Shown here: piece after piece, positions 3,667 to 63,818 of the stretch
Numbering within the stretch: position 1 is the first letter of the stretch
How the letters are laid out: each line of letters begins with the position of its first letter
Source of the DNA: Oikopleura dioica
Taxonomy: Eukaryota; Animalia; Chordata
DNA: 64,000 nt
Direction of reading: 5' to 3'
Assembly (NCBI GenBank): GCA_907165135.1
Contig: OU015569.1
Coordinates: 1,922,001-1,986,000, forward strand
Notes under the pieces: model-generated
What the model was told of the DNA's origin: nothing
What the model saw: only the letters and a program-made list of their open reading frames with translations
Databases searched by the model: none
Made by a program: the position numbers and the translations under genes

Positions 3667-4844
3667 CAATCCCCTCTAAAGAGATAAAACGTTAGCCTTT
3701 TTCGTTCTTTTCTTCCTTTTCCTGCTCATGTTGGCCGAAGAGACTGGCCTTGCCAAACTTTTAGTAAGTAGGCATCCGCCAAAATAGACTTTTTATCAAC
3801 TTAGTTCTCCATTTTTAAACTAATTTTGCAAGGACACCAGAATCAGATGTGAATAGGGAGGCGGACTATGTTCACTATCGGTGATTTTTAGAAAGAAAAA
3901 ATAATTGCAGAGGATTGTTAATAATTTCTACTTTTCGCCGATTTTTTCTGTTCTAATTTCCCGAGGTGGAAATTTCTGCACGACTACGGTAATTTGACAC
4001 GACTAAAATCGACTCGTTTTCCGATTTTCCAATTATTTTTTTTGGTACAGTTTACGAGAGACTATCGGTAAGGAAGAGAGGTCTGTGGGTTGAATCTCTT
4101 TCGCGAGCTGGAATTGAGAATCTGGCCGGAGAGAGAGAGAGAGTCGCTCGGGAGCAGCAAGATTGGTAGAGACGCGCCCAATCGCCGCTCTTCTCTCAGT
4201 CTGTCAGTCTTTCTTTCTCGCTTTTCCCTTTCCGAGGACATTTCCCTGTCAATCCACAATAATTGTGGTTTTTCAATCTATACATTCGTTGATTATTTCT
4301 ATTCGCATTTTTTCAACTCACATTAGATTTGCCTTGTCAATCAAATTCGATGATTCTTTTGTGTTAAATATCAATTACTGAAACTACACCGTATCTCATG
4401 CCCAAGAATTATTCACAGGAAGTTTACGGAGAGAAAAACTCATTGAATCCAACAGTTATTGTGGGATTTATCCAAATTTTATACACAATTGATTCGGTGA
4501 GAGCTTAGCTGTATGTTTAATACTTTGTTAATTCTCCTGTTCGTTACTGTGAGAACACAGTAGAGGAGAAAACCGTACTGTTAGATCTTGTGATTGATGA
4601 GACGAATCGTAAGACGCTTAAAAATATTATTGTTTTCAGAGGAACAATATTTTTCATCGAATTTGCGTCCGTAGCAGCTTTGCGTCTTCTCGTAGAGCAA
4701 CAGTTACTAGCATACAGACAGTATTCCGCAGCATGGTAAGACACGCAGCTAGAGACGGACGCTTTCTAGAACGGAGGCTATTTTCGACTAGAAGTTGCGT
4801 CACTTCCCGAAAGTTCGGGAGCCTAAATTATCGAGAGTATCCCA

Positions 4845-7800
4845 ATGACGTTAAATTCTCAGACAAACTTTCCCGTCGGAGGAATTCTGCCCAAGGATGA
4901 GACTGGAGTCGCGCAACTACTCGCCGAGAAACCCTACCTCGACGGGCGAGGACAAATCGTCGCTGTCTTAGATCAGGCAATGGCTTACAAAAAAAAGAAA
5001 ACCATTTTACTAAAAATAATCGTTCAAAACCATGATAAAAGGGCGTAGATCCCGGCGCAGCTGGCCTCATCGTCACTTCTGAAGGAAAACCAAAGGTCAT
5101 TGACGTGATCGACACTACTGGCTCTGGAGATGTGGATACGACCTCTGTGGCGAAAGTCGAAATCGCCGAAGATGGCTCGAAGTTCCTCACTGGCCTTACT
5201 GGCAGAAAACTGGTCCTTCCCGCCGAATGGAAGAACCCGAGCGAGAAGTGGAACGTAGGAGTTATCGACTTGACAAAGATCTTCCCAAGCTACCTAAAGA
5301 ACCGAATGAACAAGACCTGTAAAGACGAGGAATGGTCGCCAGCTTACAACAGCGCGCTCTCGAACGCACAGGACAACGTCAACCAAACTACGAGTTTGGA
5401 CGTTACTGTCCTCAAGAATCAGATGAAAAAAGAAAGCGCCAAGGAAACGTTGGAGGCGCTGAAAAAGCTCAACTCAGGATGGAAGAACCTGAGCTTCATC
5501 GCCGACGTCGTCGTCTGGAACAATGGAGAGGAGCTTGTCGCCGTTCTTGACTCATCGTTTCGCGGCGACTTGAGCTCTTGCAAAGTGATGCGTGATTACG
5601 CCACTGCGCAAGAATGGCACAAGCTCAGCGAGGAGACTCAGGTGGGTTTCAAAATTAGAGGGACAAATGCCTCAATTGAGCCAATCACAAGCTCGTATTT
5701 TTTAAAGGATGCACCCTCTTGAGGATGAAAAAACGCGATAACTCCGATAATATTGAATATATCGGAAATTCCAATGTTCGAGGCAAAGAGCATCAGATTC
5801 TGAACAGATTGATAATTTATTGTCTGGGGGTTCTATGGCTCTGGTCGGAGCTAGAGCAAAAGTAGTTTTGTCCCTCTAATTTTGAAACCCACCTCAGCTC
5901 AACTACAATTTCAAGATTTTCGACGACAAAATGGTCCAGGTCGTTTGCCCCAGCGGCTCTCACGGCACCCACGTCGCCGGAATCGTCGCCGCATATCACC
6001 CAGATGAAGAGGACAAGAATGGCATTGCTCCCGGTGCGCAGATCATTTCCGTCAAGATTGGCGACTCCCGATTGAATACCCTTGAAACGCAGGCAGGTTT
6101 CATTCGAGGCCTCCGAGCGGCTGTTCGTGGCGGTGCTTCCATCGCTAATTTCTCCTATGGCGAGCCGGCTAAATATCCAATGAAGGGCGCTTCAGCGCGT
6201 GAAATCACAGAGTGCTATCTCAAGCATAAAATGCTCTTCATCACATCGGCTGGAAACTCTGGCCCCGCTCTTACAACAGTCGGAGCTCCAGCTTCTATTT
6301 CCGATCATCTTCTTTCCGTCGGTGCTTTTGCCGCGCCCTCCTCCCACTTGCCATGCTATTCGTTGAAGGAACAAGGTCACGAAATCAACTACACGTGGTC
6401 CTCTCGCGGCCCCACCCAGGACGGAGGTGTTGGCGTCAACGTTTCAGCTCCCGGTGTTGCCATTACCGCCGTTCCCACCGCCACGTTAATGAATAATCAA
6501 TTGATGAACGGGACTTCAATGGCGGCTCCCTCTGCTGCCGGCGCCGCTGCTTGTATTCTCAGCTCGTTGAACGGCGAAGAATGGACCCCCGCTGGACTGA
6601 AGCGAGCTATGGAAAATGGCGCACGAACGATTCCAGGCGCTGAGAAAGAAACCCAAGGACGTGGTCTCATTCAGGTCCCCAAGTCTGCCGAAATCATTAA
6701 AAACGTTGATTCCGCGCATTATCAGCTGAAAGTTTCCGGTGGAAAGCGTGGCGTTTATCTTCGAGAACCATGGGAAACCGAAGAGATTCAGACGATTGCC
6801 ATGTCCGTCAAGCCGAGTTTTGTTCACCAAAAACCCAAGTCTGAAATTGTCGCCTTCGAAAAGCATTGTCTCATCAAGAACCCGGCGAAATCTTGGATCC
6901 GGGCTCCTGAATTCATTCATCTGAATTCCGGAGAGAAGCACTTCTCAATCGAAGTGGACCCGACGCGTCTTCCAGCCGGAGATTACCGCTCGGCGCACCT
7001 CACCGTCGTCGAATCCGGCAACGAACAAGAGGTGCTTTTTGTCATTCCTGTGACAGTTGTCAAGCCACTCGAGCTCGATCCAGGCGCAACCAAACAAAAG
7101 GAGCTCAACTTTTCACCTGGACAAATTGAGCGTCAATTCTTCAAAGTCCCAGTCGGTGCTAGCTACGCGAAGGTTTACCCTTTGGTTGTTATAAAACATC
7201 AACTTTGGTTGTTAAGGTCACTGTAGCTGCTACTGGATCTGAGACTGGCCGTTTCATGGTCCACGTCGCCCAGCTTGAAAACGAGAAGCACTTTGATGTA
7301 AAAACCGAAGAAAAGTTCTACTCACTCAACTCCACTGGTAATATCTAGCGTTCAAAACAATATTATAAAATATTCTTCAGAAGCACCAAAAGTGTTTGCT
7401 GTTCCAGTGAGTGAGTGTGGCACAGTGGAGCTTACTCTCGCCAAGTTCTGGTCGTCGCAAGGACAGTGCACTGCGCGCTGGTCGATCGAGTTCGGCGGCC
7501 TCTCCGTGACTAGTCCGACGGATCTAGCTCAATGCGCCAATGAGTTCATCATCAAGTCCCCTCTTCCCGAAAAGATCTTGCCAAAGGCAACTTTCGACCA
7601 GCTCGTCATTCCCATGGCGCCGCAGAATGTTTCCATCTGTCCGATCGAGTCACTTCCATACGATAAACCACTGAACGAGGCCGAGCGAACTTTCCTCGCA
7701 AAAATCGACTACTCCTTCTCTCTCGGCTCCAAAAGTGATATCACGATGAACTGCCCAACCCTCGAAGGGCTCCTCTACGAGTCCGAATTCTCGGAAACTC

Positions 7801-9575
7801 TCATTCATGTCTTCGATTCGCACAATAAGCACGTTTTTACGACAGAAGTTCTTAAGCCATCAAGCTGGAAGGTTAACCTTCCAAAGGCTGACTACAAGGT
7901 GCAAATGCACATCGCTGGTAATTAAAATAAACAAAAAAACTCAATTTTTAATTTTATAAATTTCTCGCAACTAGTTACTAACGATAGTAATTACCTTTTT
8001 GATGATTATACGTTCTTTCATTTTTCGTTTCTCGACTTTTTGTTTCTCTCTTATCTAGGCACGAATTACACGCTGCTGGAATCTCTGAGCAAAAATCTAC
8101 AACTTGATGTTCTCCAAAAACTCTCCAAGCCAGTTGCCGTCGATGCGTTCTGGAAGCATATGGACGCACTGGCGGGTGCACCCAAGGAAAGAATTGAAAA
8201 ATATTTTTCCGTAAAAAAGTCGTGTCTCACAGACGGTGACGTCGCCTTTAGACTTTGACATAAATAATCACTGTGATGGCATTTGGAACTGATTCTAGTT
8301 GTCTTGCAGACTCCGTTCTTTTTTTCAATTTTGCCAAGGCAAAGGACAAAACTCTAAAGCCTAACACACCCGTATCGCTGTACCTGGGCCCTGGAATGAC
8401 GGAGCTGGATCAGTCCGACCTTGCCAAGGCCGAAGGCGGTCGATACTTGAAGGGATCACTCACCATCCTCAAGGATGACGTAACCAAGAAGGTCGAGAAA
8501 CACAGGTACCCTGCTGACAACAGCGGTTTTACGCCCTGTTTATTTGAGCATCATCTCAATGGCGTTGTTGTTTTTGCGCGAGTTGTATCATGTAAAGCGC
8601 TGAGCTCAGCATGTCGCAAGATACTCAAAAGTGATTACTAAACGGATTTCGTTCAGCATTCGAATGAGCCTTCGCCCGCGCGCCAAGTCCAAGACTGACG
8701 CCCCGCCAAAATCTGAAAAGGACAATTCGATCGAAACAATCGAGCGCAACGCGAATGTCAGCTGGGTCAAGGCTGGCCATGGCGGTTCCGACTACTTTAA
8801 AGTTGCCGTCGAGAAGTACCCCGATCATGTCCCTCTCCATCACGTAATTGCTCATTTTCAGACATACTCATCTTCAACGATTTTTTAGGCTAGGTTGCAG
8901 TTTTTGACCAAAGAGTCCAAGGTCGGAGCCCCTGTCACCACTGACGAGGTTGCCAAGCTCTGCGAAGTCATCGAGCAACTTGTTGATTTGAAAACAGCCA
9001 TTTACAATAGCTCCATGAAGGTAATCCAAATTTCATTAAAGGATTCTGAGATGTTCTTTTCAGGGCAAGCTCACCGCTGATGAACAGAAACTGGTAGATG
9101 CGGCTAAAGAAGAAAAGGCGGCTCTTCAGCTTGCCACTGTAACGAAGATCAGAGCGAAGCTTAGCCAACACGAGAAGGGTGGCGATGACTCGGCCGTGTT
9201 AGAGCTACTCAAAAACCTGTTGAGAATGAATGACTTCATCGCAGAGGGCAAAGACAAAGAAGTCCTAAAGATGAATGTAGAAGTTGGAATGCGACTGGGA
9301 TTCCCTGGCCTTTCACTCAAGGTACGTAGATAAATCGTGGTTTACGTCTTAGATCATTAAACTCTTCCGTTGTAACAATTTACGAGCTCCAGGATGTTCG
9401 CATCTCTTTCAATATACATTTTTAGGCTGTCTCGAAGCTAACAGCCGACAGCGACTCAAAAGACCTTGCAAAAACGTTAGCATCACTGTATTCGGACTTG
9501 GGATGGGATTTTGCTGCAACGAACCAAGAGCAGAAGATCGTCGCCGACTTCCCTCATGCCCAGCTCTTTCTCTAA
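4845..9575 (+). CDS. TPP2: Tripeptidyl-peptidase II (S8 subtilase), multi-exon
   Basis: N-terminus FPVGGILPKDETG...DGRG, then VLD.GVDPGA, GKPKVIDVIDTTGSGDV, catalytic HGTHVAG and NGTSMAAP, WSSRGPTQDG and GRGLIQVP, all matching recalled TPP2 motifs. Stop TAA at 9573-9575. Confidence 0.97.
5641..5893. mobile_element. Non-autonomous TIR element (MITE) forming an entire TPP2 intron (5642-5897); introner-like
   Basis: Perfect 27-bp terminal inverted repeat GGTGGGTTTCAAAATTAGAGGGACAAA (5641-5667) versus 5867-5893. Flanked by duplicated TCA (equivalently CTCAG at 5637-5641 and 5893-5897). The GT donor lies in the TIR and the AG acceptor uses the duplicated flank. Confidence 0.92.
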
Positions 9576-10045
9576 ATAGACCCAAAATCGTTATTTCTTT
9601 CTCGTGCTAGGTCCAAGCCTGTCTTTTGTTTTCATAGGCTAGGACTTACTAAGACTCTATATTCCAAAAACCTAGTCACAGCTAAGTACCGCTGTGCCCT
9701 TTTATGCAACTTTAAACATGTTTAAAAAGTAACCTCAAACAAGCGAAACAACCTATAAAGAATAATATCATTTGTCTCTTAGTTCTATTTTTAATTTCGA
9801 ATGCAATGCTTCATATTTTTAAGTTTCTATCTTCTCGAAGTTCACTTTCAAGAAGTCCACAATTCCGGAGTTCATATTGTTCCGTTTCCACTTTTTGATA
9901 TTGAATAAATTTCAAGCTATAAACGTGTGTGAGTGTTAGAGTAGTAGGTTTACCAGCTGTACTAGACTGTCCCCAATGAGACAGTCAGAGCACTGCCGAT
10001 TATTGTTGATGATCTGGAGTTGAAAATTGCAGACGTGAGTTAAGA

Positions 10046-61800: not shown

Positions 61801-63535
61801 GCACTTCCGGCTCCGGGGAAATTACTCTGAAGAGAGGCTTTACCAAAAAATAACCATCGGAAATTGGCGCCTTTGTGTGTTTTATTAGGACGATTAGCAT
61901 GATTCCTCGCTGGTTATTTTCTCTCTGACTCTAACTTCCTCGTGACGTACGGCTTTAACACCAATTACCGTTATTGCAATCAACTTTACGAGTTTGATTT
62001 TATTGCTTGTTCCATCTAGAATACTTACTTTTATGCTGCTAATTAGGAGAGTTAATGAGATGGACTTCTGATAAACCCTCTCTCTGCAGAAACGAAGAGG
62101 ATTTTATTTCTTTTAAAATGAAGCGATCTACTTTCCGAGTCGAAATTCTATATCTTTGAATCTTTGGCAAAGTTCTGATAGATTAGTTCTCGCTTGAGTG
62201 CTCAAGAATAACAACTGATGGTTGCTCGATGCGAGTATAAGTCGCCCAAGCAGGCCAATTTCATCGTAAACGATGATTTACAACAGGCACGCGCAACACC
62301 TGCCCTACTACAGTAACATACAGTAGCCAAGAAGTGAAATATACCGACGGCGCGCACAAAGGGATGATCTTCTGAGGGTAATCCAGTTTATGGTCCCCTA
62401 TTATCCCCAACATACTGACAATGCGACTCGCGCTGGCTCCCCGCCAACTGCCGATAGATCTCGGCTCCTATCGCCGACGATTTCAGAAAAAAAAACGAAG
62501 CAGGTTCAGAAGAAGGCTGGAAAAAAGCCAAAGTATGGACAAAACGCTCTTAGCGAAATTATTAATGCCCAGCGCTTTCAATTTCGAGTGCTATCGCAAT
62601 TTCAGCCCTGACAAATAAAACAATCAAAAATACTGCAAGACTTGGTCAGAATATTTAAAACTGGAAGGCTTCGATTCCAAGCTTTTAACTTTTTAATTCG
62701 CTGAGTCGATAAGAGCCTGTCATTTTTGTACTTTGAGCGTCAGCTATGTTTATGCCGAGTTTGTCAGAAGTCGCCTTCATTTAGGCTCCCGTAGTCCTTG
62801 ACCCTGTTAGCGCTGCCATGTCCCTATTACTTTATGGGCCATCGGCGCCATGTTTGAAAGTGGCTTCTTGTCTGATCTCGGTTCCGCCCCGCCGCGCGTT
62901 TTGATCTCAATCAGCAGAACTCGCTGCTCAGAAAAGAAACTCTCAGGTACTTTCTACTGGCGCCCATCCAAAATTACTTTCAATCCGAAATCGCTCTTCC
63001 TTGATTCACGAGTAAATTTTCGTTGAATTTTAAACCATTCAACAGTTTAGTCCAACGAACTTCGCTGACGATAAAAGAAGATAATTTATTCATGTCTTTC
63101 GTGAAGCGTCACATCTTTTTTTTACTTTTTTCGTAATTTCACAGTTTTCACAAAATGTTCAATTTTTTTTCTTTCTTTTTCGTTTTTTCTTGTGCCGAAA
63201 ATTCGGATCCGCAAAGTGTCCATTACTTCGAGAGAACACATGATAACGGAAATTCTATTCAAGGGACTCAGAGTGTTCTTGAAGCAGTATGCGAATCCCC
63301 GACAGTGCAAGGAAACTTACCAGGTCGAGTTTTGCTAGCTCTCTTCGTTGATTTCCTCCGTTGAAATCAATTCGAAACTCGAGAAAGGGGTGGATGTGAA
63401 ACTAAAATGGAACTCTCTGGAATCCTGGATAAAAGATCCAAACCAATCAAGATTTATTAATAAGACGATTCTTGTTAGAGAATCTCTCGAAAAATTAAAG
63501 ACGAAAAAATTCATAAATTGGCGAAATCAAGCGTA

Positions 63536-63748
63536 CAGTAAAAACCGCTGGTTTGGGACACCTGAAAATCCTTCTGGTTTGGGACAGTCGGGCGAATTAA
63601 CGATCAAAGGCACGCGGCCACGGGGGTGTTTTTAAACTGACCGCTTTACCCGGAAGGCGAAAGTGGCGCGCGAGAGCAAAAGTGAAAATACTTCTAGTTT
63701 GGGACACGTGGGTGGACTAGGGGTGTCCCAGACCAGCGGTTTTTATTG
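63536..63748. mobile_element. Tc1/mariner(pogo)-type MITE, 213 bp
   Basis: TA at 63534-63535 and 63749-63750. TIR CAGTAAAAACCGCTGGTTTGGGACACC versus CAATAAAAACCGCTGGTCTGGGACACC (25/27). Internal repeats of GTTTGGGACA. Confidence 0.85.
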
Positions 63749-63818
63749 TACAAGAACTCAACGTATCAATTTGTAGGCAAGCTCCTTTCTTAATTATTTC
63801 GTGCTTACGATGTTTAGC

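What the first reader, a model, noticed from the sequence alone, without database searches (positions are those of the whole stretch)
5637..5897. A TPP2 intron that is exactly a DNA transposon (introner-like intron gain)
Seen: the 256-nt intron 5642-5897 consists of a 253-bp element with perfect 27-bp TIRs (GGTGGGTTTCAAAATTAGAGGGACAAA) plus one copy of a duplicated target (TCA, or CTCAG on the alternative boundary). The TIR supplies the GT donor and the duplicated flank supplies the AG acceptor. Splicing gives ...GAG ACT CAG|CTC AAC TAC (EETQLNYNFKIFD), with no extra residues against the recalled TPP2 LNYSVNIYD segment. Known: TIR elements with TSDs that are spliced out exactly are the introner mechanism of intron gain, and 3-bp TNA TSDs with G-rich ends are typical of PIF/Harbinger (Tourist) MITEs. 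Inference: perfect TIRs point to a recent insertion by a possibly active intron-generating family in this genome.
Basis: partly seen in the sequence, partly recalled or inferred. Interest (0 to 1): 0.9.

Follow-up and report, generated by a model that had tools for sequence, protein, structure and literature searches.

The report
Young transposon serving as TPP2 intron
A 253-base jumping element landed recently inside a protein-coding exon of the tripeptidyl-peptidase II gene of the tunicate Oikopleura dioica (Okinawa lineage), and its ends plus the duplicated target form a complete GT-AG intron, so it is a clean but not unprecedented example of a transposon becoming an intron.

Summary
Window 5641-5893 is a 253-bp element with perfect 27-bp terminal inverted repeats. 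It is flanked by a duplicated TCA (or CTCAG). Element plus one duplicate equals the 256-nt GT-AG intron 5642-5897.

The window matches the Okinawa O. dioica reference, X-specific scaffold. The deposited TPP2 models (CAG5094699.1 and CAG5094698.1) splice at exactly these borders.

The intron is a lineage-specific gain. Genomic DNA of the Bergen lineage, a second northern-lineage contig and three more distant oikopleurid lineages (five contigs) all read straight through the site.

A poly-A plankton metatranscriptome holds a contig about 99% identical to the window with exactly these 256 nt missing. Its other contigs are spliced at other TPP2 introns.

One caveat remains. The joined form is identical to an insertion-free allele, and no RNA and DNA from the same animal could be laid. 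However, the reference animal was a single male, so this X-linked copy is his only one, and TPP2 is under strong constraint (dN/dS about 0.03).

PIF/Harbinger membership and an active intron-making family remain untested. Only diverged relatives of the element were found.

Transposon-made introns are already known, including in Oikopleura and Fritillaria. This scan has flagged similar cases elsewhere in this genome. I class it as a new member of a known kind.

The parts
5042..5641 (+). TPP2 coding exon upstream of the element (residues 40-239 of CAG5094699.1). It ends ...GAG ACT CAG.
   Evidence: Exact protein-to-genome mapping; translation.
5637..5641 (+). Left copy of the target CTCAG. The duplicated TCA is 5638-5640. 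The final G (5641) is either the element's first base or the last base of a 5-bp duplication.
   Evidence: The empty site in the Bergen genome reads AC[G]CAG|CTC.
5641..5667 (+). Left 27-bp terminal inverted repeat. Together with the target it forms the donor CAG|GTGGGT (5639-5647).
5668..5866 (.). 199-bp non-coding core of the element. It has no long ORF, no Rfam family and no tRNA. Its 3' third is related to an element in the Bergen TPP2 intron 10.
5867..5893 (+). Right 27-bp terminal inverted repeat. It contains CTAAT (5876-5880), a consensus-like branch site 18 nt before the AG, and the C-rich run ACCCACC.
   Evidence: The branch-site reading is inference from the general CTRAY consensus.
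5893..5897 (+). Right copy of the target CTCAG (TCA at 5894-5896). It supplies the AG acceptor (5896-5897).
5642..5897 (+). The 256-nt GT-AG intron, equal to the element plus one target copy. As RNA its ends pair in a stem of about 30 bp.
   Evidence: Gene-model mapping. RNA contig joint 5636->5893 with 5 ambiguous bases, which is compatible with 5641/5898. Fold -101 kcal/mol, z = -7.5.
5898..7172 (+). Downstream TPP2 exon. It starts CTC AAC TAC and encodes the catalytic His motif GSHGTHVAG about 20 codons downstream of the junction.
   Evidence: Pfam Peptidase_S8/TPPII annotations of homologues.

Best explanation
A 253-bp non-autonomous cut-and-paste DNA transposon (a MITE) inserted into the sequence CTCAG in a TPP2 coding exon. 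This happened in the Okinawa lineage of Oikopleura dioica after it split from the northern lineages, and probably within roughly the last 2 million years. The insertion duplicated TCA. The element starts GGTGGGT and ends ACCCACC, and the target ends in AG. The insertion therefore created CAG|GTGGGT (a good donor) on the left. On the right it created CTAAT..TTTTGAAACCCACCTCAG| (branch-like site, pyrimidine-rich run, acceptor). The spliceosome removes the element plus one target copy (5642-5897), which restores the original reading frame without a scar. Because the ends are symmetrical and the target CTNAG is palindromic, the same signals arise in either orientation. Shown here: the anatomy, the absence from relatives, the exact use of these borders in the deposited models, and the existence of the exact joined poly-A RNA in the wild. 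Inferred: that RNA transcribed from the insertion-bearing allele itself is spliced efficiently.
For: Perfect TIRs and target duplication. All 11 mapped coding exons of CAG5094699.1 (Oidioi.mRNA.OKI2018_I69.XSR.g13790.t2) map exactly on the window, with the intron at 5642-5897 GT..AG. That annotation was made with AUGUSTUS using RNA-seq hints from the same laboratory culture (PMC8008620). The Bergen genome (FN653020.1, protein CBY23139.1) encodes residues 45-889 in one uninterrupted exon, and its DNA aligns across the site without a gap. The same holds for a second northern-lineage contig and for the five contigs of three more distant oikopleurid lineages that share the downstream Ras-family neighbour. 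Metatranscriptome run X1 (oligo-dT) has a 211-nt contig with one difference from the window. It joins 5636->5893 with 5 ambiguous bases, which equals 5641/5898. Other X1 contigs are spliced at the 7173-7216 and 8506-8656 introns, so they are mature mRNA. The reference was a single male and the gene is on the X-specific scaffold, so this is his only copy. TPP2 is strongly constrained between the Okinawa and Bergen lineages (dN 0.05, dS 1.77). The donor and acceptor compare well with the gene's other nine introns.
Against: The joined RNA is letter-for-letter what an insertion-free allele would give. It comes from wild plankton of unknown genotype. No RNA from an animal known to carry the element could be read. 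The three raw-read RNA runs of this species label belong to a diverged lineage, with reads only 90-95% alike and partial. AUGUSTUS would predict this intron from the open reading frame alone, so the deposited model is weak RNA evidence. The roughly 30-bp stem formed by the TIRs buries both splice sites in the folded RNA and could hinder splicing. Other follow-ups in this scan report that similar young elements in exons of this genome are polymorphic (unchecked notes).
Confidence: 0.75

Rival explanations
1. The insertion is a null or strongly hypomorphic TPP2 allele that happens to sit in the reference individual. The element is not removed, or only poorly, and translation stops 26 codons into it. 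The joined RNA seen in plankton comes from animals without the insertion.
For: The joined form equals the empty site. Perfect TIRs indicate a very young and possibly rare insertion. The long TIR stem may mask the splice sites. Unchecked scan notes report polymorphic young elements in other exons of this genome.
Against: The reference male is hemizygous for this X-specific locus and reached adulthood. TPP2 evolves under strong purifying selection (dN/dS about 0.03). Donor, branch-like site and acceptor are all present and at least as good as those of neighbouring introns. The GT/AG pair falls at the only position that restores the frame exactly.
Confidence: 0.18
2. An old intron at this position was later invaded by a MITE, so the transposon did not create the intron.
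For: MITEs of a related kind do sit inside pre-existing introns. A diverged relative lies inside the Bergen TPP2 intron 10.
Against: No intron exists at this position in the Bergen lineage, in a second northern-lineage contig, or in three outgroup oikopleurid lineages. The intron contains nothing except the element and one target copy.
Confidence: 0.02
3. The element is an assembly artefact of the Nanopore-based reference and is absent from the real chromosome.
Against: A precise target-site duplication and perfect TIRs are the signature of transposition, not of misassembly. The assembly was polished with Illumina reads from the same male (PMC8008620).
Confidence: 0.03

Closest known systems
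Introners: non-autonomous DNA transposons that generate introns (Huff, Zilberman and Roy 2016, cited in PMC13326754; Gozashti et al. 2022, PMC9860276; Gozashti et al. 2025, PMC12130899)
   Same: It is a TIR element with a target-site duplication. Element plus one duplicate is removed as a GT-AG intron. One splice site comes from the element's end and the other is completed by the duplicated target. It is absent from orthologous sites in relatives. The host is an aquatic organism. Gozashti 2022's dataset already lists three small introner families (195-215 nt, 7-15 copies) in a Tara Oceans Oikopleura sp. genome.
   Different: Introners are defined at family level, as many near-identical copies forming introns in unrelated genes. 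Only this one copy could be examined here. The nearest relative found, in the Bergen genome, lies inside an existing intron and is not itself an intron.
MITE-derived non-canonical introns of the larvacean Fritillaria borealis (Henriet et al. 2019, as summarised in PMC11282704)
   Same: The host is a larvacean tunicate. The introns sit at species-specific positions and carry TIRs and target duplications at the exon borders. The intron ends can pair.
   Different: Fritillaria introns are mostly AG-AC or AG-AT and need a modified spliceosome. This one has canonical, consensus-like GT-AG signals.
PIF/Harbinger (Tourist-like) MITEs
   Same: There is a 3-bp duplication of the form TNA. The target has a palindromic core, CTNAG, resembling the core of the PIF target CWCTTAGWG (from my own knowledge of Zhang et al. 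2001). The termini are G-rich.
   Different: The canonical duplication is TTA/TAA, whereas here it is TCA, and a 5-bp CTCAG duplication cannot be excluded. No transposase or Myb-like partner with these TIRs was found. One related end (L006) is not flanked by CTNA.
High intron turnover in Oikopleura dioica (Denoeud et al. 2010; Edvardsen et al. 2004, as cited in PMC11067885 and PMC8008620)
   Same: There are lineage-specific introns in conserved genes. Within this one exon the Okinawa lineage has three introns that the Bergen lineage lacks.
   Different: Those studies described the pattern. Here the source sequence of one new intron is still intact and identifiable as a transposon.

Membership tests
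Introner (transposon-generated spliceosomal intron) | The intron sequence is itself a transposable-element copy with TIRs and a target-site duplication at the exon borders | tested here: met
   27/27 TIRs, TCA/CTCAG duplication, and the intron equals the element plus one duplicate.
Introner (transposon-generated spliceosomal intron) | The intron is absent at the orthologous position in close relatives (recent gain) | tested here: met
   The site is empty in Bergen genomic DNA, in a second northern-lineage contig and in three outgroup lineages.
Introner (transposon-generated spliceosomal intron) | The element is precisely spliced from RNA of the allele that carries it | tested here: inconclusive
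   The exact joined form is present in a poly-A metatranscriptome contig and in the deposited models. The genotype of the RNA source is unknown, and the joined form equals the empty allele.
Introner (transposon-generated spliceosomal intron) | There is a family of near-identical copies forming introns in many unrelated genes | not testable with these tools
   There is one copy in the 64-kb window. No eukaryotic whole-genome search is available. One TIR-only match was found in a metagenome contig and one 69%-identical relative inside a Bergen intron. Unchecked scan notes list similar Harbinger-like MITE introns elsewhere in this genome.
PIF/Harbinger (Tourist-like) MITE | A 3-bp TTA/TAA target-site duplication | tested here: inconclusive
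   The duplication is TCA (TNA form), or alternatively 5-bp CTCAG. The Bergen relative is flanked by CTAA.../...TGAG.
PIF/Harbinger (Tourist-like) MITE | An autonomous partner with the same TIRs encoding a PIF-type DDE transposase and a Myb-like protein | not tested
   There is no such ORF in the window. The metagenome locus L006 ends about 275 nt inside the element.
Fritillaria-type MITE introns | Non-canonical AG-AC or AG-AT borders | tested here: not met
   The borders are GT..AG.
Tripeptidyl-peptidase II (host gene) | An S8 peptidase domain plus TPPII-specific domains, with orthology to annotated TPP2 | tested here: met
   Homologues carry PF00082, PF21223, PF21316 and PF12580 and are named tripeptidyl-peptidase 2.

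The most novel reading that the evidence does not exclude
The Okinawa lineage of O. dioica carries a currently mobile MITE family built as a self-contained, orientation-independent intron cassette. Each TIR encodes a donor on one strand and a branch site plus pyrimidine run on the other. A preference for the palindromic target CTNAG would make every insertion scarlessly spliceable. Introns would then be born at population time scales in a culturable chordate with a five-day life cycle.
Probability: 0.3. Interest if true: 0.7.

Novelty: new member of a known kind. Interest (0 to 1): 0.5.

Why it matters
Most introns are too old to show how they arose. Here the source of a new intron is still intact. 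The pre-insertion state is preserved in sister lineages. The host is a laboratory chordate in which single hemizygous males can be genotyped and their RNA read. That makes the key step directly testable in an animal: whether a fresh transposon insertion in an essential-looking exon is rescued by splicing. Together with the other cases flagged in this genome, it suggests that transposons explain part of Oikopleura's long-known intron turnover. The mechanism itself is already established in protists, fungi and other tunicates.

Tried and rejected
Steps that led nowhere:
- The RNA raw-read runs X9-X11, which carry the same species label, gave only 9-13 partial reads at 90-95% identity. They belong to another cryptic lineage and say nothing about this junction. 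Their variants do not match the outgroup contigs either.
- Exact look-ups of the 431-aa downstream ORF and of the deposited protein found no contig on record.
- A homology search with the 205-aa ORF that reads through into the element found no near-identical protein. The collection therefore shows no other insertion-bearing or intron-retaining contig.
- The first homology search would have caught an Okinawa-lineage empty-site ORF of about 640 aa and found none. The collection simply lacks Okinawa-lineage contigs for this locus.
- A scan for the TIR in viral contigs gave nothing.
- Rfam and tRNA scans of the element gave nothing.
- The metagenome locus L006 shares only the TIR. The internal alignment to the element is not convincing.

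Readings rejected:
- An old intron invaded by a MITE was rejected.
- I considered whether the X1 contigs could be contaminating DNA. This is rejected because they also lack an intron that both lineages share (8506-8656).

Full report
**Observation.** Window 5641-5667 reads GGTGGGTTTCAAAATTAGAGGGACAAA, and 5867-5893 is its exact reverse complement. The 27-mer occurs nowhere else in the 64-kb window even with 3 mismatches, and in none of 100 shuffles. The flanks read CTCA|GG...CC|TCAG. There are two symmetrical readings. One is 27-bp TIRs with a 3-bp duplication of TCA. The other is 26-bp TIRs with a 5-bp duplication of CTCAG. GT at 5642 and AG at 5897 bound 256 nt, equal to the element plus one duplicate. 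Joining 5641 to 5898 gives ...SEETQ|LNYNFKIFD... in frame. Reading through instead hits a stop 26 codons into the element.

**Whose genome and gene.**
- Earlier notes of this scan called the genome Oikopleura dioica, Okinawa reference.
- I tested this. Protein CAG5094699.1 is named Oidioi.mRNA.OKI2018_I69.XSR.g13790.t2 and annotated as tripeptidyl-peptidase II. It maps on the window in 11 blocks of exact identity.
- The coding exons run from 4863 to 9572. There are ten introns: 4977-5041 (GC-AG), 5642-5897, 7173-7216, 7338-7380, 7918-8058, 8187-8338 (GA-AG), 8506-8656, 8844-8888, 9021-9063 and 9322-9425.
- Both deposited isoforms use 5642-5897. Of the six cuts that give the same protein, only this one is GT..AG.
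- The annotation came from AUGUSTUS with RNA-seq intron hints from the same laboratory culture (PMC8008620). AUGUSTUS could also have predicted this intron from the reading frame alone.

**The intron is a gain.**
- The Bergen-lineage protein CBY23139.1 is about 90% identical. In its genomic locus (FN653020.1, locus L009), residues 45-889 are encoded by one uninterrupted 2.5-kb exon.
- Its DNA aligns across the site without a gap: GAGGAAACGCAG|CTCAACTAC, against the window's GAGGAGACTCAG|CTCAACTAC.
- A second northern-lineage genomic contig (L010) is also continuous across the site.
- The transcripts of two further lineages (L007, L008) are likewise continuous there.
- Five metagenome contigs come from three more distant oikopleurids. 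Their TPP2 is 61-67% identical in protein, and the Ras-family gene lies downstream as in the window. They too are continuous across the site, although they have introns elsewhere that the window lacks.
- The intron therefore arose in the Okinawa lineage after its split from the others, dated at about 25 million years ago (PMC11067885). The 'old intron, later invaded' reading is refuted.
- Between the Okinawa and Bergen lineages, dS in this exon is about 1.8. Zero differences across the 54 TIR bases then suggests an age of at most roughly 2 million years. This is a rough inference that assumes a source copy with perfect TIRs.

**RNA evidence.**
- The run search returned metatranscriptomes that hold part of the gene, plus raw-read runs with the same species label. 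I laid window 4700-9700 (5,001 letters) on four runs.
- The three raw-read runs gave only a handful of partial reads at 90-95% identity. They are from another cryptic lineage and are uninformative.
- The oligo-dT plankton metatranscriptome X1 gave contigs 95-99+% identical to the window.
- One 211-nt X1 contig has a single difference from the window. It joins 5636 to 5893 with five letters that fit either side, which is exactly compatible with 5641/5898. It has 41 nt on the short side.
- Other X1 contigs skip 8503-8653 (equivalent to the GT-AG intron 8506-8656, which both lineages share) and a 44-nt stretch that matches intron 7173-7216. The X1 contigs are therefore mature mRNA, not contaminating DNA.
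- So the exact joined form exists as poly-A RNA in wild Okinawa-lineage animals.
- The limit is built into the anatomy. Removing the element plus one duplicate recreates the empty site, so this RNA could come from animals that lack the insertion.

**Arguments that the carrier allele is spliced.**
- The reference was one male and the gene lies on the X-specific scaffold. The insertion-bearing copy was therefore his only TPP2.
- TPP2 is under strong purifying selection (dN 0.05, dS 1.77).
- The splice signals are complete. The donor is CAG|GTGGGT. CTAAT sits 18 nt upstream of the AG. ACCCACC is followed by TCAG|. These compare well with the gene's other introns, which include GC and GA donors.
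- Against this, the TIRs form a stem of about 30 bp that pairs both splice sites (-101 kcal/mol, z = -7.5). This could hinder recognition. Alternatively it could bring the ends together, as proposed for TIR-bounded introns elsewhere (PMC11282704).
- I put 0.75 on efficient splicing, 0.18 on a null or hypomorphic allele, and a few percent on the remaining readings.

**The element's kin.**
- No second copy is in the window.
- One JGI metagenome contig of unknown organism (L006) has GGTGGGTTTCAAAATTAGAGGGAC, followed by unrelated sequence.
- The 1,142-nt Bergen TPP2 intron 10 contains a diverged relative. It is 69% identical over 137 nt and shares the subterminal GAGCTAGAGCAAAAGTA.
- That relative has TIR-like ends, AGGAGGGTTTTCAATTTACTGGG / CCCAGTAAATTCAAAATCTACCT. 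It is flanked by CTAA and TGAG and carries a nested palindromic element.
- The lineage of elements is therefore old in O. dioica, and it is not restricted to making introns.
- Four of the five ends seen are preceded by CTNA and followed by GG. This fits a palindromic CTNAG target, the core of the PIF target as I recall it. On such a target, every insertion in either orientation would give NAG|GTGGGT ... CCCACCTNAG|. With five ends this is only a lead.
- PIF/Harbinger membership is plausible but untested. TCA is not the canonical TTA/TAA, a 5-bp duplication is not excluded, and no transposase partner was seen.

**Comparison with what is known.**
- Transposons that create introns through TIR- and duplication-derived splice sites are established (Huff et al. 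2016; Gozashti et al. 2022, 2025).
- Gozashti 2022's dataset already lists three small introner families in a Tara Oceans Oikopleura sp. genome.
- The 2025 survey adds the tunicate Styela clava.
- Fritillaria borealis has MITE-derived introns, though with non-canonical borders.
- O. dioica's high intron turnover has been known since 2004-2010.
- This scan has flagged many analogous cases in this same genome, none with RNA evidence.
- New here for this locus are the proven empty sites in sister and outgroup genomes, the exact joined poly-A RNA, and the hemizygosity argument.
- It is a new, unusually clean member of a known kind. I found no paper in the held library that describes MITE-made GT-AG introns in O. 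dioica itself.

**Verdict.** The superfamily, the family activity and splicing of the carrier allele remain to be shown. Interest is 0.5.

Noticed in passing
window 7173-7216 and 7338-7380: Two further tiny GT-AG introns (44 and 43 nt) in the same TPP2 exon are specific to the Okinawa lineage. Bergen genomic DNA and a second northern contig align straight across both sites, and the outgroup ORFs are continuous there too. Neither looks like a transposon. The first contains the direct repeat CTTTGGTTGTTA twice. X1 RNA skips the 44-nt one.
   Followed up: partly
window 8187-8338 (Bergen: L009 4834-4970): The GA-AG intron of TPP2 is shared with the Bergen lineage at the same position and with the same GA donor, so it is at least about 25 million years old. 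It is about 87% identical along its whole length, although synonymous sites of the flanking exons are saturated (dS about 1.8). Both lineages keep the end-pairing arms AATTGAAAA / TTTTCAATT, 5 nt inside the donor and 8 nt before the AG. Rfam gives nothing significant. This suggests a constrained structure or an intronic RNA, not a merely decayed transposon.
   Followed up: partly
L009 6340-7324 (Bergen TPP2 intron 10): This intron is 1,142 nt, against 104 nt in Okinawa. The excess is a relative of the MITE studied here. It carries a nested element of about 620 bp that is nearly a perfect palindrome, with 50-nt arms 100% complementary and 226-nt arms 88% complementary.
   Followed up: partly
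window 63533-63751: Another MITE-like unit of 219 bp has 30-nt inverted ends that are 93% complementary (GTACAGTAAAAACCGCTGGTTTGGGACACC...). It does not obviously lie in a coding exon.
   Followed up: partly
window 5759-5791: RNA reads of run X10, from another cryptic lineage, match 33 nt inside the element with two differences and then diverge on both sides. This may be a transcribed relative of the element's core in that lineage.
   Followed up: no
L001-L005 versus window 5042-5641: The three more distant oikopleurid lineages have introns near residues 48, 98 and 161 of the stretch that is one exon in Okinawa and Bergen. They lack the Okinawa-specific ones. Intron positions in TPP2 therefore differ between every pair of larvacean lineages compared.
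   Followed up: partly
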